Shown in pieces: positions 13,484-27,224 of a DNA stretch of 64,000 bases. The position numbers were made by a program, and so were the translations under genes. Every line of letters starts with the position of its first letter. Position 1 is the first letter of the stretch. The stretch spans positions 149,602-213,601 of IMG/VR virus record IMGVR_UViG_3300030419_004471; one strand, given 5' to 3'. Under the pieces are notes generated by a model that worked only from the letters and a program-made list of their open reading frames with translations, was not told where the DNA came from and did no database searches.

Positions 13484-13734
13484 TAAAGTACTTCTTTTGT
13501 TGTTGAAAAATACTTTTCTAATGTTTCTAATCTCTCATCAGCAGATGCTAATAACTTTAAAGCTTGTGTTGCATTATCCCAAAAATCTTTTGTGGAATGG
13601 TCTCCGATTCCAGCAGGAAAGTTTTTCAGTAAATCCAATGATAACAAAGCTTTGTTCTTATCAGCTTCAGCTTCTGATTTTAACATGTCAAATATTCTTT
13701 TATCTATTTTTGCCATAATTTTAATCATTTTCAC
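13483..13734 (-). CDS. hypothetical protein (helical)
   Basis: ORF packed between recA and the exonuclease; true start probably a few codons downstream. Confidence 0.6.
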   Translation of the reverse strand: MKMIKIMAKIDKRIFDMLKSEAEADKNKALLSLDLLKNFPAGIGDHSTKDFWDNATQALKLLASADERLETLEKYFSTTKEVL

Positions 13735-14842
13735 CAGGTAACTCAGTATCTACTTCCATAGCATCTATATCTAATGTATCTGATTTGTATTGAAGTATTG
13801 TTGATTCACATATCTTTTTGTAAATCTGGTCTCTAACTTCTTCTCTATCATCCATCAATTCGATAAAATCCTTAGATTGAAACTTTAGTTCTTCACCAGT
13901 TTCAGTATCTATGTAAGTGTACCAAGCGCCAGCTTGTTTTACTAATTTATTATCTTTCATTACTCGTAACCAAGAACCATAGTTATCAATACCTCTATCG
14001 AAGTAGATTTCAAAATCAGCCGCTCTTAAAGGTGGCCCCATTCGATTCTTTATTACTTGACATCTCACTTTCATACCAACAACCTTATCCAATCCATTCA
14101 CTTTCATTTTGATTTGCCCCATTCCCTTCAATCTCAGTCTAACTGAAGAGTGGAAAGCTAGTGCTTTACCACCTGAAGTAGTCCAAGGGTCACCAAACAT
14201 TGCGTTCATTTTTTGTCTAAGTTGATTAGTAAATACTAATGAAATTTTCTGTCTACCAATCATATTGGTAATCTTTCTCATCGCCTTAGAAATAATAATA
14301 GCTTTATCTGTAGCATATCCATCTTTATTATAATCAGCTGCTAACTCATTCTTAGTTGAAGCTGCTGCTACTGAATCTACTACGATTGTAACTAATTTAT
14401 CTCTTGAGGTTTGTCTTACCTTTTCAATGATAGTTTCACAATAATCAAAGATTTGTTCAACAGAATCCGCTGATACATAAAGAAGTTTAGAAACATCAAC
14501 ACCGATAGCTTCTAAAAATTCTCTACTTACTGCAGTTTCGGTATCAATTAATACAGCTACACCACCTTGCTTTTGTGTTTCAGCAAGACAATGAGCAGAT
14601 ACTAATGATTTACCACTCTGTTCCAAACCTGTAATCTCTGTAATTCTACCAACAGGCAACCCACCATATGGGCGATTAGAAATTGCAACATCCAACATAG
14701 CACATCCAGTCGAAATCCAACCCTCAACATTTGTGGGTGCTTCATCCGAATCAAGGAAAAATGCTACCTTCTGGTCTTTCGCTGATTTATTCAGCTCGCC
14801 AGCTAGAATATCTGCTAGTTCTAATTCTTTTTTCTTTGCCAT
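13721..14842 (-). CDS. recA: RecA/UvsX recombinase
   Basis: GLEQSGKS Walker A, VVDSVAA, FTNQLR, GGKALAFHSSVRL. Confidence 0.95.
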   Translation of the reverse strand: MAKKKELELADILAGELNKSAKDQKVAFFLDSDEAPTNVEGWISTGCAMLDVAISNRPYGGLPVGRITEITGLEQSGKSLVSAHCLAETQKQGGVAVLIDTETAVSREFLEAIGVDVSKLLYVSADSVEQIFDYCETIIEKVRQTSRDKLVTIVVDSVAAASTKNELAADYNKDGYATDKAIIISKAMRKITNMIGRQKISLVFTNQLRQKMNAMFGDPWTTSGGKALAFHSSVRLRLKGMGQIKMKVNGLDKVVGMKVRCQVIKNRMGPPLRAADFEIYFDRGIDNYGSWLRVMKDNKLVKQAGAWYTYIDTETGEELKFQSKDFIELMDDREEVRDQIYKKICESTILQYKSDTLDIDAMEVDTELPGEND

Positions 14843-14855
14843 TTAGTTTTTAATA

Positions 14856-15683
14856 TTATTTGTTAAACAAATCATCAAATGCAGCCGCAACATCATCAGT
14901 TTTCTTAGATGTTTTTGGTTTATCATCAGTATCAAATGGTAAATCATCAACTTCTTTTTCTGATTTAACCTCTTTGTTTGATAATGTTTCCTCAGCTACT
15001 GAAGGTTCACCATCTTCATTTTTATCTGAAGTTGGATTTAACCATCCTTCTAATACTGCTTTTAATTCATCATAAGATAATTCTGAATATAAATCAGTAA
15101 TTTCAGTTTGAGTTTCTAAAAATTTAGTAACATCTTCAGCTTTATCAGATAATGCACTTTGATTTGGTTTAACTCTAATAGTTGTAACAGGATATGAAGT
15201 TCCTGCTTCTTCGGCAGATTGGTATTCTATAGTAATATCTCTACCCGTTTTAGGGTCTGTTATATCACCATAATCTGGGTCTGCTATATATCCAAGAATT
15301 TCTTGATATACAGTTTTACCGAATCCCCAAAATTTGATTCCTTCTCCTTCTTGTCCTCTCACTAAAATAGGAACGAAAGTTCTTAATTTCGGCTCCATCT
15401 GCTTAGCAGCTTTCCAATCTTCCTTATCACCCATTCTTTTCAATCTATCAGCAAACTCAACTATAGGGTCAGGTCTACCAAATGATTGTGGTGAGAGATA
15501 AGTTTTATTATTAATGTTGTAGTGAAAATACAATTCGATGAAAGGATTATCTTTTTCGAATTTGTAGGGAACGATTCTGACTTGATGTTTACCAGGTGTT
15601 GGTTTCCATAGATTGTCAGACTTCTTTTGTGTGTTTTGTAGTTTGTTCAGTCTACCTCTGATTGCGTCAATATTAATTGCCAT
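14856..15683 (-). CDS. single-stranded DNA binding protein (T4 gp32-like)
   Basis: VRIVP, FWGFGKTVY, DITD...GRD; acidic tail ending FDDLFNK. Confidence 0.85.
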   Translation of the reverse strand: MAINIDAIRGRLNKLQNTQKKSDNLWKPTPGKHQVRIVPYKFEKDNPFIELYFHYNINNKTYLSPQSFGRPDPIVEFADRLKRMGDKEDWKAAKQMEPKLRTFVPILVRGQEGEGIKFWGFGKTVYQEILGYIADPDYGDITDPKTGRDITIEYQSAEEAGTSYPVTTIRVKPNQSALSDKAEDVTKFLETQTEITDLYSELSYDELKAVLEGWLNPTSDKNEDGEPSVAEETLSNKEVKSEKEVDDLPFDTDDKPKTSKKTDDVAAAFDDLFNK

Positions 15684-15814: not shown

Positions 15815-16159
15815 CTATTTTGCCCACTTTTTTCGGTTAACAATTTGAGAGATAACACCATAGACTGAAAGGTCTTGATATGTATCTTCTATTGCTTCAC
15901 CAACCTCATCAGGTTGACCTTTTACAACCAATTGTTTTAACCTCTGAATCTTATCGTTTTTTCTAAACCAAAGACCAGTAAGCGCAACGTTAATATCATC
16001 CGATGATTCCAATACTGAACCTACTGATATATTATCAGGTCCATAATTTCTTTGTTTCTTACAAAATGTATCGTACATCTCATCTAATATTTTTTTAAAT
16101 TCTTGAGTTGTTGCTGGAAATTTATCCTCACAATACTCAATCGCAGTTTGTTTTTTCAT
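15815..16159 (-). CDS. nucleotide-modification-associated domain 1 (DUF1599) protein
   Basis: KKQRNYG, R.NDKIQRL, IEDTYQDLSVYG pattern. Confidence 0.75.
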   Translation of the reverse strand: MKKQTAIEYCEDKFPATTQEFKKILDEMYDTFCKKQRNYGPDNISVGSVLESSDDINVALTGLWFRKNDKIQRLKQLVVKGQPDEVGEAIEDTYQDLSVYGVISQIVNRKKWAK

Positions 16160-16211: not shown

Positions 16212-18725
16212 TTAAAATGAAAAAAACTTTTCAGCTGTTTTTGTTGAGGATAAAACCTCACCCCATTTCATAGCCCCATAAAAATCCTCTAACTTCTTTA
16301 AAAGTTCTCTTTCAAAGATTTTATCATAATCAATATAGGTCTTTACTAAATCCATAATTTCCTTTGGGTCATCATATCCTTTGAATGCTACTCCATCTAA
16401 TCCCATTGGATTTTGTTTAAGATACACCCATTTAACCTTATCACCATTTTTCATAGGTTCATATTTCATCTCACATTTAAAATGAGATAATAGTTGATTA
16501 AATGCTATAGCTGCTTTTACGTGAGCTGGTGTGCCTGATACAAATTGGAACATTCTGATTTGTTTACCCTTTGGAAGATATTTTGTTAAATTCTTTACAG
16601 ATGTATTTTTTGCAATATCTACAACATTCATCTGAGATAAATTATTTTTGAAATCATAAATCTTATCAGTAAGTTCAGTTTCCGTTTTACCTTTTAGAAT
16701 ATCAATTAGAACTTCACTCATAAACTTTCTAAATGCCGCTGGATAAGATGACCTAACAACATCTAAGCCCTTTACATCTAATTTATTAACAGATACACCA
16801 TTATCAGATATAATCCATTGTGCGTATCGTTTTTTAGCTATCCAAATACCTGATTTAGAAACATATTCTTTTTTAATCTCAAATCTATGTTTATCAATAT
16901 TGAAAATTCTTTTTGCAAGTATATCATAAAAATCATTTAGATAATCTTGCATTTCTCCTGCTATTCCATTTACGAAACCAGCGATATCATCATCAGAATT
17001 ATCTCTCCAAGTTGGGTTTCTACTATCAAGTAAGGGAGTAGCACTAAAAAAAACGGAATCAGTGTCAATGTATATATTACTATCCAAATCGGGATTACCC
17101 AATTCTTTATTGTACCTGATGTTAGCCATGTCAGCAGTTGACTTAATAACTGTCTGTCCTGTCGTGGTAACAGCGGTAGCATTATCAACATCATAAAACC
17201 TAAAGGCAGGAAGGCCAAGCACCCCATATAAAGAATTAAGTAGAATTTTTTGTACCAATTGACGTTTTTTATACCATTCATATTTTTCATTATCTCCGCT
17301 TTTTCCATATTGTTTCATTTTATTTTTGAACTCAACTCTTTGATTAAACCAAATATCTAAGATATCAGGTATACAACCAACAGTATCAGTTCTATATAAT
17401 ACACCATTAGATGCAACTGAAAATTTTGAATTATCTAAATACTTTTTAAGATTTTCTTTTGTAATCGTATCTTCACCGATTGTATAAGTATCCTTACCAC
17501 CCTTTACAAACTCATTCGCATCCCAATCATTAATCTTACCAATCTTAGTTTCTGGTGAGATATTAATACTCATAATAATAGATGGATATAGAGAAGTTAA
17601 ATCTAAATCATAAATCCATTCATATTTTCCAACGATAGGTGCTTTTACATATGCTCCGATAAACTTCTCCTCATTGTTATCTCTTAATGCTTGCATTCTC
17701 TCCTGTCTATCAGCTGGTTTATTTGGTGCTACGATACCTTTTCTTTTCAAATAACATAACAATGCTCCTTCTAAGTATTTTGATGAATAAACAAAATCTT
17801 CGTATGGAACGTGACCTGCATGACAAATACCTCTTGCCGTATCGATGAATTGTAACTTCTTATCCATATCAACTACCAACTCAACATCCACTAAGTTATA
17901 CTCAATAAACTTCTCTATATCATCTCTAAATAATTGGTCTAAGTTTCCTTGATATTCTACCTTACCTCTACCTAACTCTTTTGATGCAATACTATCTAAA
18001 CGATAATTGTCTAATTCTGTATAAGTAAAGTTTTTGTAAAGTGCTAAATAATCTAAATAAGATACACCAGCCATAAAGAATCTCTTACGATAAGGTGACC
18101 AGAAACATTCACCGATTGGTGATAATCTATTTGCGTTTCTTTTACCTATAACATTTTTTATTCTATTATAAAGATATGGTGTATCAAAGTAATCTATATT
18201 CCATCCAGTAACAATAGTTGGATTAATATATTCATATAGTTCTAAATATTTTTCTAATAATTCTGCTTCACTTCTAAATGGTAGTACAATAGCTTTATCA
18301 GTTTTCTTATTTGATAAAACATTATCTTTATCTAAAACCAAAACATAATATTGATTGGTAGCTGAATCATGCAATGCTATAGAAGTAATTTCATTCTTAG
18401 CTTCTTGCATATCAGGTAAACCTGTTTCCATCTCTACCTCAATATCATATGTAAGAGTTATATGCCCTTCTGATGGTAAATCCGAATCAGTATATGTATC
18501 TACTAAAACTCTAGTCGTTTCTGCAACATCTGATTCAAAAAGATTAGGATTATCTTTATTGAATTTATATATCTTAGTTAACCTATCTCCATACAAAGAT
18601 ACACACTCACCATTTTCTGCTTTTTCATATGCATATCTTGTATAAGGGAAAGTTCTGTAACCTAATTTATCATCCCATAAGTGTATGAGATTCTTCTGTC
18701 TTTGGTAATATACGTTTTGGTACAT
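16212..18725 (-). CDS. family B DNA polymerase (T4 gp43-like)
   Basis: Exo DIEVE; pol motifs DLTSLYPSI, KILLNSLYG, YIDTDS, KKRYA. Confidence 0.97.
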   Translation of the reverse strand: MYQNVYYQRQKNLIHLWDDKLGYRTFPYTRYAYEKAENGECVSLYGDRLTKIYKFNKDNPNLFESDVAETTRVLVDTYTDSDLPSEGHITLTYDIEVEMETGLPDMQEAKNEITSIALHDSATNQYYVLVLDKDNVLSNKKTDKAIVLPFRSEAELLEKYLELYEYINPTIVTGWNIDYFDTPYLYNRIKNVIGKRNANRLSPIGECFWSPYRKRFFMAGVSYLDYLALYKNFTYTELDNYRLDSIASKELGRGKVEYQGNLDQLFRDDIEKFIEYNLVDVELVVDMDKKLQFIDTARGICHAGHVPYEDFVYSSKYLEGALLCYLKRKGIVAPNKPADRQERMQALRDNNEEKFIGAYVKAPIVGKYEWIYDLDLTSLYPSIIMSINISPETKIGKINDWDANEFVKGGKDTYTIGEDTITKENLKKYLDNSKFSVASNGVLYRTDTVGCIPDILDIWFNQRVEFKNKMKQYGKSGDNEKYEWYKKRQLVQKILLNSLYGVLGLPAFRFYDVDNATAVTTTGQTVIKSTADMANIRYNKELGNPDLDSNIYIDTDSVFFSATPLLDSRNPTWRDNSDDDIAGFVNGIAGEMQDYLNDFYDILAKRIFNIDKHRFEIKKEYVSKSGIWIAKKRYAQWIISDNGVSVNKLDVKGLDVVRSSYPAAFRKFMSEVLIDILKGKTETELTDKIYDFKNNLSQMNVVDIAKNTSVKNLTKYLPKGKQIRMFQFVSGTPAHVKAAIAFNQLLSHFKCEMKYEPMKNGDKVKWVYLKQNPMGLDGVAFKGYDDPKEIMDLVKTYIDYDKIFERELLKKLEDFYGAMKWGEVLSSTKTAEKFFSF

Positions 18726-19855
18726 TAACTATTTAATTGTTTATGAAGTTCTTTAATCATTTTATCTTCGTTATTGGATAATTGTTTAGCTCTTTCGATT
18801 GAACGAAGTTCTTGTGTAAATCTAAATATATCATCATCCAACATTTTATCTAACATTTCAAAGAAATCTTTCTTTTTTGTGAAAAATAATCCATCTGGGT
18901 CTATTTCTCTATAACATAAAGAATCTTGAAATATCATTGGAGTACCATTCATCATACAATCAGTACCACTAACACTCCAACCATAATTTGTTTGTCTCAT
19001 CTGTACACCAACTTTACAATTTTGTAATCTTTCGTAGTATTCATGCTTTGGAACTTTTGTATTATCAATCCAAGATTCACTTGGTTTACCTTTAAGTTGT
19101 GGCACCCATAAAACAAAATCATCTCTTTGTTTTCTATATTCCTTCATAAGTTTTAAAAACGCAGGCCATCCTTTGTAACCAGCAGCCCTATGATTGAATA
19201 CAATAACATTTCTTTTTTCGTTTGAAGGTTTTTCAACTATAAATTCTTTTGGTAATCCTAAATTCCATACTGTAAGAATATCATCTAATTTATTTACAAA
19301 TTCTTCAGTAAATGTTTCTTTAGCTTCTTCTAATACTCTATTCTTTTGGTCTTGTGTATTTAAATAACAAGTATCCATTTGAGATACTCCTAATAATTCT
19401 ATAGGTAACCACATCCATTTTGCTTTACCCGGCCTTCTATCTGCTCCATTTGCCGATTTCATTTCCCACCAATGACAATAACCAATTATTTTTGTATCCA
19501 TATTCTTTTTATATCTACCAGTCTGAACCCAATCTGGTAAATGAGAATATATTACATCATAATCTATGTCTTTTGATAATTTTATTAAATCTAATGGAGG
19601 GAATGCTCTTTGATTCATCATATCACCACTAAATGGTGCAATATGTTGTTTTACATTTTCTAAATTAAGTTTTCTTACTGGTTTTGGTAATATTACATTC
19701 CAAAAGTAATCACCTAATTTATCCAATGCAATAATATGGTTGTATAAAACATCCACAAATGAATCTTTTTCAATACTACCAGCATTCGTGATATTTGGTA
19801 TCACCAACACTTTTCTAGCATCTTTGTAATCTATTTTAGTTTCCCAAAAACTCAT
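18725..19855 (-). CDS. GT-B glycosyltransferase, translationally coupled to the DNA polymerase
   Basis: IVFNHR, YGWSVSGTDCMMNGTPMIF (GT4-like region); 1-nt overlap with the pol start. Confidence 0.75.
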   Translation of the reverse strand: MSFWETKIDYKDARKVLVIPNITNAGSIEKDSFVDVLYNHIIALDKLGDYFWNVILPKPVRKLNLENVKQHIAPFSGDMMNQRAFPPLDLIKLSKDIDYDVIYSHLPDWVQTGRYKKNMDTKIIGYCHWWEMKSANGADRRPGKAKWMWLPIELLGVSQMDTCYLNTQDQKNRVLEEAKETFTEEFVNKLDDILTVWNLGLPKEFIVEKPSNEKRNVIVFNHRAAGYKGWPAFLKLMKEYRKQRDDFVLWVPQLKGKPSESWIDNTKVPKHEYYERLQNCKVGVQMRQTNYGWSVSGTDCMMNGTPMIFQDSLCYREIDPDGLFFTKKKDFFEMLDKMLDDDIFRFTQELRSIERAKQLSNNEDKMIKELHKQLNS

Positions 19856-19864
19856 TATCTCTAT

Positions 19865-20371
19865 TTAGTGTATTTGGATTCCATTCTCATATATTTCTTT
19901 AGTTTGTAGGTGAGCTGCTAATCTTGGGTCTTTACCTTTATTCTTCTTCTTAAATTGTTTTTTTAGTTTTGGTAAAAGTAAATTATAAACAGTATCTCCA
20001 TCCAATTTCCATATCTCTGCTATTGGATTGCTTGGGTCTGTAGTAAATCTAGCAATATAATGGTTTTTATATTTTTTAATTTTTTCTTTTTTTAAATAAT
20101 CATTTTGTTCTTTCCAAGTATTAAATACGGAAATTCCAGAATATGCAGCTTTTATTTTATCAGCTGTTGTTGATTTATATTCACAATCTCCATCGGAGTC
20201 TATCCCATCAGCTCCACTCAATGTTTCCGCCACTTTATGACCAAGTTTAATTGCTATCAAAATCTCTCTACTTCGTGCATAAGAAAATGGGTCTCCCCAA
20301 TTTCCTTCTTTACAAGCCTCCATCATAAGATTCCAAGCTTTTGAATATTTTTGTTCTGGTGTTATACGCAT
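19865..20371 (-). CDS. PvuII-like PD-(D/E)XK restriction-type endonuclease (putative)
   Basis: GADGIDSDGDCEYKS resembles the recalled PvuII catalytic segment GNDAVDNAGQEYELKS; similar size and C-terminus (ENGIQIH vs EHGTKIY). Confidence 0.6.
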   Translation of the reverse strand: MRITPEQKYSKAWNLMMEACKEGNWGDPFSYARSREILIAIKLGHKVAETLSGADGIDSDGDCEYKSTTADKIKAAYSGISVFNTWKEQNDYLKKEKIKKYKNHYIARFTTDPSNPIAEIWKLDGDTVYNLLLPKLKKQFKKKNKGKDPRLAAHLQTKEIYENGIQIH

Positions 20372-20390
20372 ATTTTAGGGTTTTATGTTA

Positions 20391-20422
20391 CTAATATACG
20401 AAATTATTTTGAATTATCCAAG
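20391..20422 (-). promoter_or_regulatory. Bacteroidota sigma70-type promoter (PvuII-like/GT/PolB operon)
   Basis: CTTG-N20-TATATTAG. Confidence 0.75.
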
Positions 20423-20446
20423 GAAAAAGTGAAGTTTTTTTCAGTT

Positions 20447-20842
20447 TTATGAAAATTTTATTACATCGAATACTCTTGTGTTGATTTTCTTAGTGCCTTC
20501 AACATTAGTTACTATGATTGAGTTTCTGAATTTATCCCAATCTACTGTAAAAGATTTATCAATTACACCATTATTCTCTTCTTTTATCAGTTCGTTTAAT
20601 GCGTTTATTGTGTACAATGTATTTGATTGTTTTTTTCTATGTACCAATATAGTATCAGATAATGGTTTATCTGGTTTATATTTAGTGTCTATATTATAAG
20701 TTACGAACAACTCTTCTAAATCTGATTTATTTTGAAGAACATAAATGTAGTTATAAACTATATGGTATGTTTCTCTGATGTCTTGAAGTGTTGTTTGTAA
20801 CCTCTCTTTTGTTGTAAAAGTACACAATAGTTGAGTTTTCAT
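20447..20842 (-). CDS. hypothetical phage protein
   Basis: LLCTFT...LVHRKK.SNTLYTINALN; preceded by a late-type motif at 20870. Confidence 0.7.
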   Translation of the reverse strand: MKTQLLCTFTTKERLQTTLQDIRETYHIVYNYIYVLQNKSDLEELFVTYNIDTKYKPDKPLSDTILVHRKKQSNTLYTINALNELIKEENNGVIDKSFTVDWDKFRNSIIVTNVEGTKKINTRVFDVIKFS

Positions 20843-20899
20843 AAATCTTTCTTCCGATTTTTATACACCTATAAGTATTAATCGCAAAAAGATTAATTA

Positions 20900-22924
20900 T
20901 TATGATGGTTTCTTATCACCTGATTTCAAACATTTCTGTAAAGATGGATGATAATTGTATACTGTTGATAGTTTACCTAAGATTCCTGTCTTAGAACGTT
21001 GTTTCTTTTCACCAATTGGATATCTATCACCACCTTCTGTTACTGCATATATTATTTTAGAAGCACCTGTTATTGCTGTTCCACCTCTTTGAGTCTGTTC
21101 AGATTCTTCACTTACTTCAAAGTTTTTAATCATTTGATTTTTATTTTCAAATGGTAGACAGTTTGATAATGATTTTTTATCTACTTTTACACCACCACTT
21201 TCTTGATAAAATGCGTCTTGGTCTTGGAAAACACCTTCACCACCAAACATCATACCTAAGTGAAGTTTTTCTGCAACTGATTCTGCTTCTAATACAGTAC
21301 CCATACCCATTTCTTTACCATCCACCATCACTTTAGTTTCGTTCAACTTTTTAATAGTATCTAAATCTGTACCAATTGTTGCTTTTCTAATTTTACCAAT
21401 TTCTGCACCAATTCGAGGACCACCTGTTGCATTTGATAAATCTGCTACAATTCTTTGTTCATCCTTTGTTAAATCATTTGGGTTTTTATTAGCGTAGTTT
21501 ACAAATCCCTTCATAATCTGTTCATCTGTTGGTGGGGTATCCGAACCATCAGGTAAATATTCAGTTTTCTTTGAAATCTTTTTTTCCATCGCTTTCCAAT
21601 ATTTTAAAGGGTCTTTTCCTTTTGATAATGTTTTTGAAAGTTCCACTAACTCACTTGTATTAACACTATCTAAATGTTTTCCAGGTCCTGAAGTTACAGT
21701 ATTTAGTTTTTCTTCCAATTCTGAATATTTCTTTTCTTGGTCATCCATTATCGTTTTAGCAATCTCACCTTGTTTTTTATCTAGTGTACCCTTTGATACT
21801 AAATTATCTACTTCTTTCTTTTTTAAAGTAAATTCTGCTTTTAATGATGATTGTGCTACTAAGGCGTTAACATTATCTTTATCAGAATAAAAAGTCATAT
21901 GTAAATCACCTGTATCTTCATTGGTAACGAATATTGCTGTATCCGATGGATTTGCTCCACCACCACCACTTTTGATTATATCAATTGCTTCTTCTTTACT
22001 AACTTCTGTATTTCCTAAAAATACTTTACCTGTTACACCATTTACCATATTTTCTTGGGCTTTTAAACCTTTTGAATCTCCGAAAAATGGTTCTGCTTTA
22101 GCATTTGTGATATTATTTTTGCTAAGAATATTTTGTCTAACGTGGTCATTTTTACTTTGTGCTGCTCGAGTAGCGATTATTGCTTTACCAGCCTCACCTA
22201 TTGATATACCATATTTTTCTGCTATTGGGGCCGCTTCTTTTTTTGTTATACCTGTTGGTAGGTTATCACTTTTATTATCTTTTCCTAAACCACTTCCTTT
22301 TAATTGGTTACAAGTATTCTCTAAAACGGAATCATAATTAAATTCTTTTCCCGAGTTTATTGAGTCTGTTGCTCCTGTAGATGAAAATATCTCATTTAAC
22401 ATTGAACCTGCTGAACCTGGCGCACCTTTTTCAAATCCCGTTTCAATAAATTTATCCATTGATGCTCTATTATCTTCTGATGAAAAAGTATCTGATTCTT
22501 CACTCGGTTTATCAGTTTTTTCTTTTTCCTTCTCTATCTTTTTCTTTATATCAGGTGCATGAGCAAAATCACCTTTACCACTTATAGCAGTTTTTGGTTT
22601 TTCTTCTGTTGATTGTGCATCTGTATCTATTGGTGTATATTTTCCACCATCATCTTTTTTAAAGGTTTGTGCATCTTTTTTATCCTTATCACCTATCTTA
22701 ACATAAACACCTTTTCCTTTATGATGGTATTTCTCATCTTCCTTTTCATCTTCCTTTAATAAGTTTTTGATTAGTTCGTATTTGACATCAGTCAATCCCA
22801 TTTCAGTAAGAACCTCACTCAAAATACTAATATGAGCAGGTTTACTAAAATTAGGATATCCTTCATCTGAACGATAGGATATTTCTAATAGTATATCTTT
22901 TATAATGTCATCTTTATTCACCAC
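20900..22924 (-). CDS. large hypothetical protein, possibly virion-packaged
   Basis: 674-aa ORF; N-terminus rich in LxE sites, then a K/D/E-rich linker; late-type motif abuts the start. Confidence 0.7.
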   Translation of the reverse strand: MVNKDDIIKDILLEISYRSDEGYPNFSKPAHISILSEVLTEMGLTDVKYELIKNLLKEDEKEDEKYHHKGKGVYVKIGDKDKKDAQTFKKDDGGKYTPIDTDAQSTEEKPKTAISGKGDFAHAPDIKKKIEKEKEKTDKPSEESDTFSSEDNRASMDKFIETGFEKGAPGSAGSMLNEIFSSTGATDSINSGKEFNYDSVLENTCNQLKGSGLGKDNKSDNLPTGITKKEAAPIAEKYGISIGEAGKAIIATRAAQSKNDHVRQNILSKNNITNAKAEPFFGDSKGLKAQENMVNGVTGKVFLGNTEVSKEEAIDIIKSGGGGANPSDTAIFVTNEDTGDLHMTFYSDKDNVNALVAQSSLKAEFTLKKKEVDNLVSKGTLDKKQGEIAKTIMDDQEKKYSELEEKLNTVTSGPGKHLDSVNTSELVELSKTLSKGKDPLKYWKAMEKKISKKTEYLPDGSDTPPTDEQIMKGFVNYANKNPNDLTKDEQRIVADLSNATGGPRIGAEIGKIRKATIGTDLDTIKKLNETKVMVDGKEMGMGTVLEAESVAEKLHLGMMFGGEGVFQDQDAFYQESGGVKVDKKSLSNCLPFENKNQMIKNFEVSEESEQTQRGGTAITGASKIIYAVTEGGDRYPIGEKKQRSKTGILGKLSTVYNYHPSLQKCLKSGDKKPS

Positions 22925-22936
22925 CTATAAATATCC

Positions 22937-23569
22937 TTATATAATAGTTTTACTTCTTCTATTAACCTGACATTGGATTTCGTAATCACTCCAATGTTTT
23001 GTTGGTACTGAATTTGGAAAGTAAAAACATTCTTTTCTACCATCTGGGAATGTTATATGTTTCCAATAACCATTTGGTACATGCCCACCAGTTGGTAATA
23101 TTAAATGGTCTTTTTCAAAATGTAAAACAATTCTTACTTTTAAAGTACCATATTTTTTAGCCCATTCTCTTTCTTGAGCTTCCAACTCTCTCCACGCACC
23201 TCTATTTAACTTATCAAATTGTAGAGAACAATTTAAATAAGAAAATGTAGTTTTTAAATTTTCTTTAGTGTCGGTAAAAGCAGCGGCTGGTGCCATATGA
23301 CCTTTATCCCACACATTATTTTTATAATCATCATTATCTGATGTATAAACTCCTTTAGGAACATAAAAATCCATACTACCTCTATCGAATTTTTTAACAA
23401 TATTCCTAACTTCATACTCAACCCAATTTGGTTGTTCTAATGTTTCATTGTAAGAAACTTTAAATACATCATTCTCAATTCTTACATCTGTTCTGTTTTG
23501 TCCAAAGCTACTAAGGAAAACTCCTACGCATAATAGTAGGGATAAGCTTAATTTCAATTTGTATTTCAT
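22937..23569 (-). CDS. secreted DNA/RNA non-specific endonuclease (NucA/Serratia type)
   Basis: N-terminal signal peptide (MKYKLKLSLSLLLCVGVFLSSFG); DKGHMAP, NRGAWRELE, VPNGYWK. Confidence 0.9.
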   Translation of the reverse strand: MKYKLKLSLSLLLCVGVFLSSFGQNRTDVRIENDVFKVSYNETLEQPNWVEYEVRNIVKKFDRGSMDFYVPKGVYTSDNDDYKNNVWDKGHMAPAAAFTDTKENLKTTFSYLNCSLQFDKLNRGAWRELEAQEREWAKKYGTLKVRIVLHFEKDHLILPTGGHVPNGYWKHITFPDGRKECFYFPNSVPTKHWSDYEIQCQVNRRSKTII

Positions 23570-23618: not shown

Positions 23619-24857
23619 CTAAATAAGTTTTATTTTTGGCTTTTCAGGTTCTTTACTATCTAATTCTTCACCATCTAATAAATGGTATAAATTTGAATGT
23701 ACAAAGGGTATTGGGTCTGAATCACCTCTCGGGTTTTGCTTGGTTCTTCGTACTAATTTTTTAAGTTGTTCTATAAGTATAGGATATTTTGGATGTGTAG
23801 ATACACACACATTTCTATCATTATACCATTCCTCTGTATGCACTCTCCAATCTTGAATCGCTCTAAACATTATATGATAATCTGTAAAAGAATCTTTGAA
23901 TATATCTTCTATCATATCAACGAAATCTATCATTTGTTCTACATTATGGTCTTGTACAACAAAAGAGAAGGTACAATTTAATATTGGTTCATCTATAGTA
24001 GCTATAAATTTTAAATTCTCCATTAATACATCCCATCTACCATTTAATCTTACTTTATTTTCATAAGTTTCTTTTTCTGCCGCATCTATTGATATTTCTA
24101 TACCTTCAATAATTGGATGTACATTAGATATGGAGTTCCACATCTTTTCAGTAAGCATATTACCATTTGTAACTATAAAAAGATTTTTAAGTTTTGGATA
24201 TTTCTTTATGTCTAAATTTTGTAACCATTTTCTAAATACATTAGAATAAAATGGGTCACCACTACCTGTACATATTATTTTTTCTACTCCTTCACTAAAC
24301 TGAGTATCGAATGAATTCATTATACTTTCTGCGTTAGGATTATGAGCATTTGTATTTAAATGTATTCTACAAGATGGACATTTAAGATTACAACTAGCAT
24401 CGAAATTTAAATAAACTTGGTCTGGTAATTTTTGATGTTGAATATATTCAAATTCTTTTAAAGAATAGTTTTTTCCAGTATGAGGGTCAATGAATTTAGC
24501 CTTAAATTCCTTTTCTGGTAATGAACTATGTTCATTTACCCAAGGACACATCATAGAACAATACTTATAATCTCCTTCAGATATTGCTTCTCTTAATTTA
24601 GTATGAAATTTATTATTCCAATTTTTAGAAAGGTCATTTATATCTTCTATTTCTGATACATCGTGAGCTGATAATTGTCTAGGGAAATTTTTTTTATCCT
24701 TATGTCTTGATAATAGTTCGGCTTCAAATTCTTTTTTAAGAGTATCTTGGTCGAACCATTCTGGACAACAAGGGGATGTTGAGGTGTTAAATATCTGTAA
24801 CTCCCTGAATGGGGCTGGACATCTAAAATCTTTTAATCTTTTTAGATTCTTCTTCAT
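23619..24857 (-). CDS. radical SAM enzyme with an extra N-terminal Cys cluster
   Basis: CNLKCPSC (CxxxCxxC), GSGDPF, TNG, ISIDAA; N-terminal CPAP...PCC...CSMMC. Confidence 0.9.
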   Translation of the reverse strand: MKKNLKRLKDFRCPAPFRELQIFNTSTSPCCPEWFDQDTLKKEFEAELLSRHKDKKNFPRQLSAHDVSEIEDINDLSKNWNNKFHTKLREAISEGDYKYCSMMCPWVNEHSSLPEKEFKAKFIDPHTGKNYSLKEFEYIQHQKLPDQVYLNFDASCNLKCPSCRIHLNTNAHNPNAESIMNSFDTQFSEGVEKIICTGSGDPFYSNVFRKWLQNLDIKKYPKLKNLFIVTNGNMLTEKMWNSISNVHPIIEGIEISIDAAEKETYENKVRLNGRWDVLMENLKFIATIDEPILNCTFSFVVQDHNVEQMIDFVDMIEDIFKDSFTDYHIMFRAIQDWRVHTEEWYNDRNVCVSTHPKYPILIEQLKKLVRRTKQNPRGDSDPIPFVHSNLYHLLDGEELDSKEPEKPKIKLI

Positions 24858-24869
24858 ATACTATATATA

Positions 24870-25943
24870 TTATACCTTCGAATAATCTTTTATTACCATC
24901 GCACCATTTATATATGTAAAATCTTCAAACATTTTTTGAAGTTCATAATTAGAAAACTTTTTATGTAATCCGTTATGACATTCATTACATAGAATTTGTA
25001 TATCATTTTCTTCTTCAAACCCCATTCTTTTATAGGTATTATGATGGGCATGATATTCCGATTCTTTTTTTGATGCATCTCCACACATCTGACACTTACA
25101 TCCTCTTTTTTTAAGTAGATATTTTCTTTTTCTTTTCCAACAACCAGAACCTATGTAGAGAGAATGTTGATTCTCAAATTGCACTTCTGATAAATTAAAT
25201 TTTTCAGAAAAGGGATTCTTCACATCTTCCTTTAATGATAAATCACCATTTAATATTAGATATATTAAATCTCTATTTTGTCGTATTACTCTCAAAGAAC
25301 TATTATCATAAATTGGTGATAAAGCTTTCTGAATAATATTCAAATGTTTATCATTTAAAATACCACCATAGGTTATTGATGAAGAAATCATAGTTCTGGA
25401 CTGAGAGTTGATTTGTTTCCAAACTTTTTTATTTTGTTTAATTTGAATTAACATATTAATCATCTCTTCGTTAAGATAATATTTATAATTTACTTCTGTT
25501 TTTGGAATTTTTCTAACATATGGTTTTGTTTCAAGTGATGTTACTTTGGGTTTTTTAATTCTTGTTATTTTTGTGGGTTTTATTTCTTTAACTTTAGCGT
25601 AAAAGAATCGTGGATTCGATTCATCTAATATATCCATTATACCCTTTATCTTAACTGCTTTTTGAATTGGTTTAAGATGTTTTGAGTTTAGAATTCCTTT
25701 TCTTCTAATAGATTGAGTAATTAATCCTTTTGTATTTGGGTTAACTTTTTTATAATCTTTAGATTGTTTAAATAACTTTAAAAATTCTATTTGTCCAGGG
25801 TTCAATGGATACATTACCCTACCCCTCGACTTTTTCTTTTTCTTTCTTTTGGGTTTTGATTTAGTATTTTTAGTGCGTTTTTTAGAAGGTAGAGTAAGTT
25901 CTCCACTTTTATATTTTTTAAATATAATATCCATTTCACTCAT
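24870..25943 (-). CDS. HNH endonuclease with a duplicated basic N-terminal domain
   Basis: C-terminal CQMCG...HAHH...LCNECHNGLH. Confidence 0.8.
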   Translation of the reverse strand: MSEMDIIFKKYKSGELTLPSKKRTKNTKSKPKRKKKKKSRGRVMYPLNPGQIEFLKLFKQSKDYKKVNPNTKGLITQSIRRKGILNSKHLKPIQKAVKIKGIMDILDESNPRFFYAKVKEIKPTKITRIKKPKVTSLETKPYVRKIPKTEVNYKYYLNEEMINMLIQIKQNKKVWKQINSQSRTMISSSITYGGILNDKHLNIIQKALSPIYDNSSLRVIRQNRDLIYLILNGDLSLKEDVKNPFSEKFNLSEVQFENQHSLYIGSGCWKRKRKYLLKKRGCKCQMCGDASKKESEYHAHHNTYKRMGFEEENDIQILCNECHNGLHKKFSNYELQKMFEDFTYINGAMVIKDYSKV

Positions 25944-25946
25944 ACC

Positions 25947-27224
25947 TTAAACTTTCGAATAATCTTTACCAAAGCTCATTCTAGTCGGAAATCCAAAACT
26001 TTCAATAGTTGATTGAACATCCATTAACCATTGAACATCTTTTGGAGCTTCTTCCGCAAGTTCAAATAAGAATGAATCATATGTATATAAAATCGGTAAG
26101 GGTAAACTCTTTTCCTTCAGCTTTTTCATAACCTCAATATTAAATTCAGTTTCAGTCGCTTGAAGTAGATAATTGAAGTACTTTTGTCCAGTCGGTTGTT
26201 CTATCCAACCTATAGGTATTCTTCTACCTTTTGGGGTTTTGATATAACCATTCTTTATAGCTTCTTCTTGCATCTTTCTAATAAATCTATCAACTTTATC
26301 AAAGAATGGGATTTTTCTATCTTCATCAGTTACACCACCATAAAGTATTTTAAATGTTCTTCCTTTTGAATCATCATAGGAACATCCATATTGGTCTGCT
26401 AACCATTGGTGAACGGATGTATCGGGTAATTTATACTTAATCATTTTAGCAATAATCCTAACGTGATATGCATCATAATCGAATTGTACAAACTTTTTAC
26501 CTTTTGGGGGAATGAATATCTCTCTACTACCATCACTTTTATTAAGAGCTGAATAATTAATACCCAAATGCCTGTTGGATGGTCTGCTTGTTATTGTATA
26601 TGGATTGTATTCTGTAAATGTTCGAGAGAACCAAAGTGATTTCTTATTATCTGGCCATCTATCAAGAAATTTTTCCCTATCGACCTGAATCCCCTTTTGT
26701 TCGATTTCTGAAAGAATAGGTATCATAGTATCATCAATCCACGAATTTGTTGATGGAATTAGTAATTGTTGTCTTAATTCATCTAAAATATCCTTTATAA
26801 CCTCTATAAACTTCATTATAGGGATACTTTTACCTAAACTATCTCTTATACCCAAACGAGTGTAAAAGTTCGTTAAATCCTCTATTTTCTCTCCATAAGG
26901 ATATAGTTTGTTATTTTCAAAGAAAAGATTTGATTGTATATCCTTAGTATTCTTTATATTTAACTTAGTTTGTAGTAGCCCTTTCTTATTCCATACCCAT
27001 TTTTCTTTTTTTGATTTTGATAAATCTATTTCTAATTTTTCACAATCATTATGATTAAATGGTAAAATAAAATGTAAATTTTCAAATGCTACATATAAAA
27101 AGGATATATCAGAAGTCATTGGATGACGCTCTAAATCCTCCCAAATAGGCATAATTAATGAAGTTTCATTATTCCAATATTCGAGAAATTGTTCTTTTTC
27201 ACTATGTGACTCAACAATAATCAT
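25947..27224 (-). CDS. short, divergent family A DNA polymerase
   Basis: Motif A FDYDAYHVR, motif B KGRTFKILYG, NYLLQATE, motif C YTYDSFLF. Confidence 0.8.
   Translation of the reverse strand: MIIVESHSEKEQFLEYWNNETSLIMPIWEDLERHPMTSDISFLYVAFENLHFILPFNHNDCEKLEIDLSKSKKEKWVWNKKGLLQTKLNIKNTKDIQSNLFFENNKLYPYGEKIEDLTNFYTRLGIRDSLGKSIPIMKFIEVIKDILDELRQQLLIPSTNSWIDDTMIPILSEIEQKGIQVDREKFLDRWPDNKKSLWFSRTFTEYNPYTITSRPSNRHLGINYSALNKSDGSREIFIPPKGKKFVQFDYDAYHVRIIAKMIKYKLPDTSVHQWLADQYGCSYDDSKGRTFKILYGGVTDEDRKIPFFDKVDRFIRKMQEEAIKNGYIKTPKGRRIPIGWIEQPTGQKYFNYLLQATETEFNIEVMKKLKEKSLPLPILYTYDSFLFELAEEAPKDVQWLMDVQSTIESFGFPTRMSFGKDYSKV

What the first reader, a model, noticed from the sequence alone, without database searches (positions are those of the whole stretch)
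19865..20371. PvuII-like endonuclease without a cognate methyltransferase, first gene of the GT-PolB operon
It resembles PvuII in size, catalytic segment (D...D...ExK) and C-terminus. No C5/N4/N6 methyltransferase is visible in the window, so self-protection would have to come from the Mom/GT-type modification or from lacking the target site.
Basis: inference. Interest (0 to 1): 0.6.

Follow-up and report, generated by a model that had tools for sequence, protein, structure and literature searches.

The report
Solitary PvuII-like endonuclease in marine phage
A large marine T4-like phage encodes a small restriction-type DNA-cutting enzyme with the PvuII fold; in nearly all related viruses this gene sits beside a protective DNA methyltransferase, but here that partner is gone and the genome is almost free of GATC and a few other short palindromes, so the phage probably survives its own enzyme by lacking the target.

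Summary

The family is essentially virus-restricted and behaves as the R half of R-M modules. In 78 of 86 loci it lies within 1.5 kb of a DNA methyltransferase, with overlapping reading frames wherever the junction was inspected. That includes all three closest relatives checked (67-72% id).

This 213.6-kb genome (CheckV 100%) has no detectable DNA methyltransferase. The slot is occupied by GT-PolB-DUF1599, a module that relatives keep about 50 kb away from the endonuclease, so the link to the GT is incidental.

The PvuII site CAGCTG is not avoided (71 copies). GATC is nearly absent (5 against about 600 expected), as it is in the other MTase-less relatives, and TGATCA and TCATGA are absent outright.

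Best reading: a solitary restriction endonuclease tolerated because its target is missing, not because of glycosylation. Its specificity is unproven and host-imposed avoidance remains a rival. It is a new variant of a known kind, of moderate interest.

The parts
19865..20371 (-). PvuII-fold endonuclease gene (168 aa, P0001). Invariant D55, D58, E64, K66. Predicted homodimer through residues 5-44.
   Evidence: ORF. Fold. Conservation. Dimer ipSAE 0.69 against best control 0.00.
20372..20446 (-). 75-nt AT-rich spacer upstream of the endonuclease gene, a possible promoter region. It holds only a weak sigma-70-like match (20420-20393, 9 of 12).
   Evidence: The promoter scan found no more hits than chance (39 against 47.5 in shuffles), so this is not evidence of a promoter.
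18725..19855 (-). GT4-like glycosyltransferase (376 aa), starting 9 nt after the endonuclease stop codon. Together with PolB and DUF1599 it occupies the position where relatives carry the cognate methyltransferase.
   Evidence: Weak Pfam GT4/GT1 hits (E about 5e-4). 71% id ortholog directly upstream of PolB in G003 and G001, far from their R gene. No homolog in cultured phages. Virus-only ESM clusters and GT4-like neighbours.
16212..18725 (-). Family-B DNA polymerase (837 aa); its start overlaps the GT stop.
   Evidence: Best cultured match is Microcystis phage Mel-JY01 PolB at 53% id.
15815..16159 (-). DUF1599 ('nucleotide modification associated domain 1') protein, the last gene of the module inserted between the endonuclease and gp32.
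   Evidence: PF07659 E 2.4e-4, sub-threshold. phrog_1485 E 1.4e-14. 78% id ortholog in G003.
13721..15683 (-). gp32-like ssDNA-binding protein (14856-15683) and RecA/UvsX-like recombinase (13721-14842). These are synteny anchors that directly follow the R-M pair in relative L086.
   Evidence: Pfam. Synteny 63-69% id with L086.
20447..22924 (-). orf131 (20447-20842) and orf674 (20900-22924), the upstream synteny anchors shared with L086.
   Evidence: 61% and 29% id to L086 genes in the same order.

Best explanation
The gene encodes a homodimeric, Mg2+-dependent PD-(D/E)XK restriction-type endonuclease of the PvuII structural class. It belongs to a virus-restricted family that normally forms a two-gene restriction-modification module with an overlapping N6-adenine DNA methyltransferase.

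In this phage lineage the methyltransferase has been lost. Its place between the endonuclease and gp32-RecA is now taken by the GT-PolB-DUF1599 module, leaving a solitary endonuclease.

The phage most likely tolerates the enzyme because its recognition site is missing from its own genome, not because its DNA is glycosylated. The best candidate is a GATC-core or similar short palindrome that is absent or nearly absent from this and the other methyltransferase-less relatives.

The enzyme would then cut only site-bearing, unprotected DNA. That means the host chromosome (shut-off and nucleotide salvage) or co-infecting phages, as described for chlorovirus and marseillevirus R-M systems.

Shown: fold, conserved motif, predicted dimer, family-wide MTase linkage, absence of an MTase here, site statistics.
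Inferred: catalytic activity, specificity, biological role, direction of the evolutionary change.

The confidence given is for the composite. By part: PvuII-fold nuclease about 0.9; solitary on this contig about 0.85; protection by site absence about 0.55; GATC-core as the site about 0.35.
For: Fold and active site
- PvuII is the best PDB match by a clear margin, and an Atlas PvuII-domain cluster matches at TM 0.74.
- D55, D58, E64 and K66 are invariant in 28 homologs.
- A symmetric homodimer is predicted: ipSAE 0.69, best control 0.00, runs agree in at least 92% of contacts, partner pLDDT at least 86. The calibration was 21 of 30 solved pairs against 0 of 23 single chains.

R-M family
- 78 of 86 loci have an MTase within 1.5 kb: 67 a mini-MTase, 9 a PF01555 MTase, 2 both.
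- The mini-MTase (NPPF) hits phrog_799 'DNA methyltransferase' at E 3e-37, has weak adenine-MTase Pfam hits in 21 of 21 members, and has fold hits to M.TaqI and METTL5.
- The PF01555 partner (DPPY) overlaps the R stop by 20-26 nt in L086, L092, L093 and L006. Its best PDB relative is a small N6-adenine MTase, 5hek, at E 6e-32.

Loss here
- The window's enzyme groups (SH-aLRT 93) with L086, L092 and L093, which all carry the MTase. A second MTase-less clade (L005, L010, L011; support 98) is separate.
- Synteny in L086 is orf674-orf131-R-M-gp32-RecA. Here it is orf674-orf131-R-GT-PolB-DUF1599-gp32-RecA.

No MTase in the genome
- PF01555, PF00145, PF02086, PF05869 and PF02384 give no hit at E<=1.
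- There is no tblastn or profile hit to either partner MTase.
- Only one ORF of 60 aa or more in the whole genome carries [DNS]PP[YFWH]; it has no motif I and no Pfam, NCBIfam or PHROG match. No PCQ motif was found.

Site statistics
- GATC observed/expected: 5/604 here; 1/547, 0/307 and 0/133 in the MTase-less contigs G003, G001 and G002; 41/51 and 41/52 in the MTase-bearing contigs G004 and L086.
- GATC is the site that flips most clearly between the two classes (6/1591 against 82/102 pooled). CTAG flips more weakly.
- TGATCA and TCATGA are absent from all four MTase-less contigs.

The junction is real in nature: independent contigs bridge it, and the stretch is held in runs from at least 7 further studies.

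The role is argued by analogy only: chlorovirus virion REases degrade host DNA (PMC7019647) and marseillevirus GATC R-M excludes competitors (PMC7253447).
Against: - No biochemical evidence of cleavage or specificity exists.
- Five GATC sites remain in the genome (and one in G003). That would be lethal for a fully active GATC cutter unless the true site is longer (YGATCR and TGATCA are at zero) or the residual sites are tolerated.
- The two short MTase-bearing contigs closest to this phage (L092, L093) are themselves GATC-poor (1 against 11 expected). Their MTases are 67-78% identical to that of GATC-normal L086. So GATC depletion does not strictly track MTase absence and may be imposed by the host.
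- The same genomes avoid several other palindromes (CATG, CTAG, CTTAAG, TACGTA), as expected from host R-M pressure in general.
- More distant family members without a nearby MTase (L078, P-SSM2) have normal GATC. P-SSM2 has two PF01555 genes elsewhere, and G005 is only 15% complete.
- The contig is 'linear' and its 100% completeness is an estimate.
- The equivalence of D55/E64/K66 to PvuII's catalytic residues was not verified by residue-level superposition.
Confidence: 0.5

Rival explanations
1. The endonuclease is kept harmless because the phage DNA is hypermodified by the neighbouring glycosyltransferase (perhaps with DUF1599). This would be a T4-like strategy in which unmodified host DNA is cut and glycosylated phage DNA is spared.
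For: The GT starts 9 nt after the R stop and overlaps PolB. The GT is highly conserved (71% id) next to PolB in related phages. A DUF1599 'nucleotide modification associated' gene is in the same block. CAGCTG, the site of the structural prototype, is frequent in the genome (71 copies).
Against: R and GT are about 50 kb apart in G003 and G001, so the adjacency is lineage-specific. The closest relatives pair R with an MTase, not a GT. No hydroxymethylase-type enzyme was found: ThyA scores as canonical at 323 bits and there is no Tet/JBP. The GT resembles generic GT4 enzymes and has no detected link to known DNA glycosyltransferases. Genome-wide purging of GATC, CATG, CTAG and others would be unnecessary for comprehensively modified DNA.
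Confidence: 0.12
2. It is a genuine solitary restriction endonuclease, but the GATC depletion is unrelated to it and is imposed by host R-M systems. Its real site is some other sequence, either rare in the phage or left uncut because of timing, compartment or an inhibitor.
For: Many palindromes are avoided at once. MTase-bearing L092 and L093 are also GATC-poor. Avoidance of host R-M sites is widespread in phages (PMC6286503).
Against: Two phylogenetically separate MTase-less lineages are both almost GATC-free, while MTase-bearing G004 and L086 are normal. GATC is the site that switches most clearly between the classes.
Confidence: 0.25
3. It is a modification-dependent (Type IIM/IV-like) nuclease, as DpnI or the BisI-family enzymes NhoI and Eco15I are. 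It needs no methyltransferase and attacks methylated host or competitor DNA.
Confidence: 0.06
4. It is not a restriction enzyme but a structure-specific recombination or repair nuclease (RecU/Hjc-like resolvase) belonging to the replication-recombination gene block (PolB, gp32, RecA).
Against: The resolvase matches cover only residues 30-168 and score well below PvuII. The position is not conserved: the gene lies elsewhere in G003. The strong, repeated linkage with DNA MTases is unexplained by this role.
Confidence: 0.05
5. A protective methyltransferase exists but was missed. It could be too divergent to detect, encoded on an unassembled part of the genome, or supplied by the host.
For: The contig is 'linear' and completeness is CheckV's estimate. 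One ORF (genome 138525-139199) has an NPPH motif. P-SSM2 keeps its PF01555 MTases 12-23 kb away from R.
Against: Five MTase Pfam families, both partner-MTase types and a family-agnostic motif scan over all ORFs of 60 aa or more were negative. The NPPH ORF has no motif I and no family hit.
Confidence: 0.08

Closest known systems
R.PvuII (Type IIP restriction endonuclease, CAG^CTG; PDB 1PVI, 1F0O; Pfam PF09225)
   Different: Only about 15-18% identity, and below Pfam's threshold. The partner MTases carry DPPY or NPPF (adenine-type, from my own knowledge of motif IV) rather than an N4-cytosine type. CAGCTG is frequent in this genome and in MTase-less relatives, so the specificity is almost certainly different. 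The family is virus-restricted. The MTase is missing here.
Virus-encoded R-M systems of chloroviruses (such as CviAI, GATC) and marseilleviruses (mel_015/mel_016, GATC)
   Same: A lytic virus carries a Type II endonuclease next to its methyltransferase. The proposed roles are host-DNA degradation and nucleotide salvage, or exclusion of competitors (PMC7019647, PMC7253447).
   Different: Those viruses infect eukaryotes, and their R genes are reported always next to an M gene. Their enzymes were not compared with this one here. In this case the virus is a tailed phage and the R is solitary.
T4 host-DNA nucleases EndoII/EndoIV (denA/denB) with hmC-glucosyl self-protection (own knowledge)
   Same: The concept of a phage nuclease that attacks host DNA while phage DNA is exempt.
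   Different: Different folds. T4's exemption rests on a dCMP hydroxymethylase, a dCTPase and glucosyltransferases. No hydroxymethylase was found here, and the GT linkage is not conserved.
BisI-family (NhoI, Eco15I) and DpnI modification-dependent endonucleases
   Different: Lower structural similarity than PvuII. The family-wide pairing with MTases argues for a methylation-sensitive enzyme, not a methylation-dependent one.

Membership tests
Pfam PF09225 Endonuc-PvuII | Score at or above the gathering threshold (25 bits) against the family HMM | tested here: not met
   No hit for the window's protein at E<=1 by hmmscan or E<=10 by the six-frame genome search. 15 of 28 homologs hit at 13-20 bits, with a best E of 1.6e-4, colinear over profile positions 9-150.
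PvuII-like structural class of PD-(D/E)XK restriction endonucleases | PvuII-type fold over the whole chain | tested here: met
PvuII-like structural class of PD-(D/E)XK restriction endonucleases | Catalytic acidic residue plus an (D/E)-x-K motif on adjacent strands, conserved | tested here: inconclusive
   D55, D58, E64 and K66 are invariant in 28 homologs, and they flank or lie in the hairpin formed by strands 56-58 and 61-68. Residue-by-residue superposition on PvuII D58/E68/K70 could not be obtained: no PvuII sequence or coordinates were available to the alignment tools.
PvuII-like structural class of PD-(D/E)XK restriction endonucleases | Symmetric homodimer | tested here: met
   Prediction only. 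ipSAE 0.69 against best control 0.00; 21 of 30 solved homodimers and 0 of 23 monomers reach the mark; at least 92% contact agreement; pLDDT at least 86. The interface comprises residues 5-44 plus 109-116. The pass may partly reflect likeness to solved PvuII dimers.
Type IIP restriction-modification system | Cognate DNA methyltransferase encoded with the endonuclease | tested here: not met
   None in the window or in the 213.6-kb contig. The feature is met in relatives: 78 of 86 loci, including the three closest checked.
Type IIP restriction-modification system | Sequence-specific cleavage within a short palindrome, blocked by cognate methylation | not testable with these tools
   Only indirect site statistics are available: GATC 5/604, TGATCA 0/89, TCATGA 0/89; CAGCTG has 71 copies.
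Modification-dependent endonucleases (DpnI; BisI family NhoI/Eco15I) | Closest structural kinship, and independence from a methyltransferase across the family | tested here: not met
RecU/Hjc Holliday-junction resolvases | Best fold match and conserved placement in recombination modules | tested here: not met

The most novel reading that the evidence does not exclude
A lytic marine phage keeps a restriction endonuclease as an offensive weapon with no methyltransferase at all. It is immune only because its 214-kb genome has been purged of the enzyme's GATC-core target. This 'R-only, site-free' state arose at least twice independently from ancestral phage R-M modules. That would make genome-wide site loss a heritable substitute for modification, and the family a widespread, unannotated class of R-M modules in T4-like marine phages.
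Probability: 0.3. Interest if true: 0.7.

Novelty: new variant of a known kind. Interest (0 to 1): 0.52.

Why it matters
Restriction endonucleases without a methyltransferase are expected to be lethal, and virus-encoded R-M systems are well documented mainly in giant viruses of eukaryotes.

This work identifies an unannotated, virus-restricted family of PvuII-fold endonucleases. It is 'hypothetical' in GenBank phage records and 'unknown function' in PHROGs. The family forms R-M modules in many T4-like marine phages, including cultured Prochlorococcus phages P-TIM68, P-SSM2 and P-SSM5.

It also includes natural cases where the methyltransferase has disappeared in genomes that lack GATC. If the specificity is confirmed, this is a clean natural experiment. 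It would show how a mobile R-M module can decay to a solitary nuclease, how phages might use restriction offensively (host DNA salvage or exclusion of competitors in nutrient-poor seas), and how far site avoidance can replace modification. It could also yield new small restriction enzymes and mini adenine methyltransferases.

Tried and rejected
- Direct sequence links to PvuII failed. Single-sequence and profile searches of the PDB found nothing: P0001, P0119 and the A1 profile. Pfam and NCBIfam gave nothing on the window's protein, and neither did PF09225 searched on the genome.
- I tried to fetch the PvuII plasmid record for a residue-level alignment, using an accession recalled from memory. 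It is not held, so the catalytic-residue mapping remains an inference.
- The promoter/terminator scan gave no more hits than chance, so operon structure is not established.
- megablast of the region against cultured phages found no match. The GT has no tblastn match in cultured phages.
- The NPPH-containing ORF (genome 138525-139199) was considered as a hidden MTase and rejected: no Pfam, NCBIfam or PHROG hit and no motif I.
- Motif-IV-bearing ORFs in the MTase-less relatives turned out to be an HNH, GT4-like proteins and a GT+2OG-oxygenase fusion.
- CAGCTG, GATATC, AGCT and GTAC are rejected as targets because they are common in the genome. Bare CATG is rejected for this phage because 139 sites remain.
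- The mini-MTase fold model has low overall confidence (pLDDT 58), so its fold hits are supportive only.
- The careful maximum-likelihood tree did not finish in time. The quick IQ-TREE tree was used.
- RNA evidence is limited to two 151-nt contigs in one metatranscriptome library, which is not proof of transcription.

Full report
OBSERVATION

The ORF reported at 19865-20371 exists on the minus strand (ATG to stop, 168 aa). The window is the last 64 kb of a 213,601-bp IMG/VR viral contig. The contig is about 31% G+C, is rated 100% complete by CheckV, and has almost all genes on the minus strand.

PolB's nearest cultured relative is Microcystis phage Mel-JY01 (53% id), and T4-like cyanophages sit near 34%. 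gp32, RecA/UvsX-like and UvdE genes lie nearby. So this is a deep-branching T4-like marine myovirus of unknown host.

The gene is conserved: 386 homologs of 163-190 aa, mostly from marine metagenomes. It matches PHROG 35715, 'unknown function', at E 9e-61. Homologs at 43-47% id are annotated 'hypothetical' in Prochlorococcus phages P-SSM2, P-SSM5 and P-TIM68.

IS IT PvuII-LIKE?

By sequence, only faintly. The window's protein hits nothing in Pfam, NCBIfam or the PDB. However, 15 of 28 diverse homologs give colinear, sub-threshold hits to PF09225 Endonuc-PvuII (13-20 bits against a cut-off of 25).

By structure, clearly.
- An AlphaFold2 model built on a 28-sequence alignment has pLDDT 93.2.
- Its ten best Foldseek hits in the PDB are all PvuII (prob 1.00, TM 0.53-0.61).
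- That stands above NhoI/Eco15I-N (8.0-9.3), DpnI (7.1-7.4), RecU/Hjc (about 7) and EcoRV (about 4).
- An independent shape search of the ESM Atlas returns viral 'hypothetical' clusters (TM 0.78-0.80). It also returns a cluster named for the PvuII domain, with PF09225 in 55% of members (TM 0.74, rmsd 2.3 Å over 142 residues).

The segment G53-A-D55-G-I-D58-x-D-G-x-C-E64-Y-K66-S is invariant in the family. It sits on the hairpin formed by strands 56-58 and 61-68, which is the canonical place for the PD...(D/E)xK site.

From my memory of the PvuII sequence (a lead, not a test), D55/E64/K66 would correspond to D58/E68/K70. I could not obtain a residue-level superposition.

A homodimer is predicted with ipSAE 0.69 against a best control of 0.00. 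In calibration, 21 of 30 solved homodimers and 0 of 23 monomers reach this mark. The runs agree in at least 92% of contacts and pLDDT is at least 86. The symmetric interface is built from the N-terminal helices, residues 5-44. This is as expected for a Type IIP enzyme, though the pass may partly reflect likeness to solved PvuII dimers.

WHAT THE FAMILY IS

I fetched 80 IMG/VR loci (of 411 contigs that encode a relative). To these I added three assembly contigs for the closest proteins and two cultured phages.

In 67 of the 86 loci the endonuclease gene is followed by a 175-200-aa protein, 74-85% identical to P-TIM68 AIR93421. Where inspected, the two reading frames overlap. This partner has these properties:
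- an invariant ...SNPPF... motif IV;
- a hit to phrog_799 'DNA methyltransferase' at E 3e-37;
- weak hits to the EcoRI-methylase, Eco57I and MTS Pfam models in 19-21 of 21 members;
- fold hits that are all SAM-dependent methyltransferases, led by METTL5 and M.TaqI, from a model that is only partly confident.

It is a mini N6-adenine-type DNA methyltransferase.

Nine further loci have a roughly 250-aa PF01555 (beta-class, DPPY) methyltransferase within 1.5 kb, and two loci have both types. In the four PF01555 loci examined closely (L086, L092, L093, L006) the MTase start overlaps the endonuclease stop by 20-26 nt.

The best solved relative of the L086 MTase is the small adenine MTase 5hek/5hfj (E 6e-32), followed by CcrM. 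M.PvuII itself is a weaker hit. P-TIM68 has a PF01555 gene (E 3e-58) directly upstream and the mini-MTase directly downstream.

So 78 of 86 loci are R-M-like modules. Among 185,579 cellular species genomes, only one 2.3-kb MAG contig encodes a relative, so the family looks virus-restricted. That scan works through peptide patterns, so distant cellular relatives could be missed.

WHAT IS SPECIAL HERE

The three closest relatives for which context could be retrieved all carry the overlapping PF01555 MTase: P0005 (72% id), P0007 (69%) and P0008 (67%).

L086, a 61-kb contig, is syntenic with the window:
- L086: PolA-like - orf674 - orf131 - (two small ORFs) - R - M - gp32 - RecA.
- Window: PolA-like ... 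orf674 - orf131 - R - GT - PolB - DUF1599 - gp32 - RecA.

The MTase slot is therefore occupied by GT-PolB-DUF1599.

That module is conserved in the related contigs G003 (167 kb) and G001 (93 kb): GT 71% id and directly upstream of PolB, DUF1599 78% id. There it lies about 50 kb from their PvuII-like gene, while orf131, gp32 and RecA stay together. The R-GT adjacency is thus a lineage-specific rearrangement, not a conserved functional unit.

The junction is not an assembly artefact. Contigs from two other studies bridge it (X2: 19715-20455, 3 differences; X3: 19718-20418, about 97% id). The stretch is held in DNA runs from at least seven studies besides the probable source.

Two 151-nt contigs from one metatranscriptome library lie inside the gene. 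That is only weak evidence of transcription.

IS THERE A METHYLTRANSFERASE ANYWHERE?

- Six-frame HMM searches of the whole contig for PF01555, PF00145, PF02086, PF05869 and PF02384 found nothing at E<=1, while the control genomes rang.
- tblastn with three partner MTases, and a profile of the mini-MTase, found nothing.
- A family-agnostic scan of all 421 ORFs of 60 aa or more found one [DNS]PP[YFWH] motif (NPPH, genome 138525-139199). That ORF lacks motif I and has no Pfam, NCBIfam or PHROG match. The scan found no PCQ motif.

Within the limits of a 'linear' contig, the endonuclease is solitary.

HOW DOES THE PHAGE SURVIVE IT?

(a) Modification by the GT. I found no support beyond adjacency.
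- ThyA scores as a canonical thymidylate synthase (323 bits), and there is no Tet/JBP domain.
- The GT resembles generic GT4 enzymes and belongs to virus-only clusters.
- The genome shows extreme avoidance of many short palindromes. Comprehensively modified DNA would not need that.

(b) Absence of the target.
- The prototype site CAGCTG is frequent: 71 in the genome and 27 in the window, and it is also present in the other MTase-less contigs. So the specificity must differ from PvuII's.
- GATC occurs 5 times against about 600-790 expected (O/E 0.01).
- TGATCA and TCATGA are at 0 against about 89 expected, TACGTA at 0 against 24, and YCATGR at 1 against 206.
- The other MTase-less relatives are the same: GATC is 1/547, 0/307 and 0/133 in G003, G001 and G002. 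G003 is 87% complete and has no PF01555 gene.
- The MTase-bearing contigs G004 and L086 are near normal (41/51 and 41/52).
- Over all 4-8-bp palindrome classes tested, GATC is the site that flips most clearly between the two groups: 6 against 1591 expected, versus 82 against 102. CTAG shows a weaker flip.

In the quick ML tree the window's enzyme groups with the MTase-bearing L086, L092 and L093 (SH-aLRT 93). L005, L010 and L011 form a separate MTase-less clade (support 98), and L006-9 (with MTase) lie outside both. The simplest reading is two independent MTase losses, each in a GATC-free genome.

CAVEATS TO THE GATC READING

- L092 and L093 carry the MTase yet are GATC-poor (1 against 11 expected). 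Their MTases are 67-78% identical to L086's. So depletion may have preceded MTase loss, or may be host-imposed.
- Five GATC sites persist here, all with a 5' purine on at least one strand, and none is YGATCR. The numbers are too small to be significant.
- CATG, CTAG and CTTAAG are also avoided, which is what general host R-M pressure produces (PMC6286503).
- More distant family members without a nearby MTase have normal GATC. P-SSM2 has two PF01555 genes elsewhere, and G005 is only 15% complete.

I therefore treat 'target missing from its own genome' as the favoured mechanism. 'GATC-core site' is the leading guess, not a conclusion.

LIKELY ROLE (inference by analogy)

Chloroviruses package their restriction endonucleases and use them to degrade host DNA within minutes of infection. 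Their R and M genes are always adjacent (PMC7019647). Marseillevirus GATC R-M systems do not degrade host DNA but can destroy competitors that lack the system (PMC7253447).

A solitary endonuclease in a site-free phage could do either without the cost of an MTase. If the host methylates the same site, only competitor exclusion would remain.

RIVALS CONSIDERED

- GT-based protection (0.12).
- A true REase whose site is unrelated to the GATC depletion (0.25).
- A methyl-dependent enzyme like DpnI or NhoI (0.06). This is contradicted by the family-wide MTase linkage.
- A RecU/Hjc-like resolvase (0.05). It has a lower, partial fold match and a non-conserved position.
- A missed or host-supplied MTase (0.08).

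COMPARISON AND NOVELTY

It works like, and folds like, PvuII, but it fails Pfam's membership threshold and almost certainly has another specificity. It is best described as a new, virus-restricted family within the PvuII-like branch of PD-(D/E)XK restriction endonucleases.

I found no description of such R-M modules in T4-like marine phages in the literature searched. The MTase-less state coupled to a site-free genome is a new variant of a known kind.

I rate the interest moderate (0.52). The fold assignment and the orphan status are solid. The striking part, immunity by site loss with repeated MTase loss, is plausible but unproven.

Noticed in passing
whole genome G000 (window = C1:149602-213601); the only GATC in the window is at 55605: Extreme avoidance of many palindromes at once: GATC 5/604, CATG 139/738 (YCATGR 1/206), CTAG 192/509, TGATCA 0/89, TCATGA 0/89, TACGTA 0/24, CTTAAG 4/64, and GGTACC 1 against 34 under a maximal-order Markov model. 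The related contigs G003 and G001 have 0 CATG against 668 and 374 expected.
   Followed up: partly
L013-L083 (IMG/VR loci), L002:6512-7042 (P-TIM68 AIR93421): T4-like cyanophages carry an unannotated two-gene module. The PvuII-like gene overlaps a 175-200-aa mini DNA methyltransferase (invariant NPPF; phrog_799 at E 3e-37; fold hits to M.TaqI and METTL5). P-TIM68 also has a PF01555 MTase directly upstream.
   Followed up: partly
window 18725-19855 and 16212-18725; G003:103980-107629: A GT4-like glycosyltransferase fused head-to-tail with PolB is conserved at 71% id, more conserved than PolB itself (56%), in related phages. It has no homolog in cultured phages. Its substrate is unknown.
   Followed up: partly
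window 15815-16159: A DUF1599 ('nucleotide modification associated domain 1') protein lies between PolB and gp32 (PF07659 E 2.4e-4; phrog_1485). It hints at some nucleotide or DNA modification chemistry that I did not resolve.
   Followed up: no
window 22937-23569: A DNA/RNA non-specific endonuclease (PF01223, E 8e-29) has a hydrophobic, signal-peptide-like N-terminus. This is a second nuclease, two genes upstream of the operon, and it is also found near the PvuII-like gene in G003 and G001.
   Followed up: no
window 23619-27224: A radical-SAM protein (412 aa), an HNH-domain protein (357 aa) and a 425-aa protein with a weak family-A polymerase match lie in a row. A phage with both PolB and a PolA-like fragment is unusual.
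   Followed up: no
G003:142936-144618 (L102:2939-4618, minus strand): A 560-aa fusion of a GT1-type glycosyltransferase with an OGFOD2-like 2OG-Fe(II) oxygenase domain occurs in the related MTase-less phage. It is a candidate hydroxylate-then-glycosylate enzyme. I did not check whether the window's genome has one.
   Followed up: no
window 19875-19917 (C-terminal codons of the endonuclease): A natural variant in run X3 carries a paired 1-nt deletion (19899) and 1-nt insertion (19906), plus a cluster of substitutions. The last roughly 15 codons are recoded while the frame is kept.
   Followed up: no
L112 (JAKUSK010000074.1, 2.3 kb, Nitrososphaerales MAG): This is the only 'cellular' genome hit for the family among 185,579 species. 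It is a short contig and is probably viral DNA binned into the MAG.
   Followed up: no
L010:1885-3600 (G002): In one MTase-less relative the gene directly downstream of the PvuII-like gene is a 571-aa HNH-domain protein. Its N-terminal DPPY motif mimicked an MTase motif IV.
   Followed up: partly
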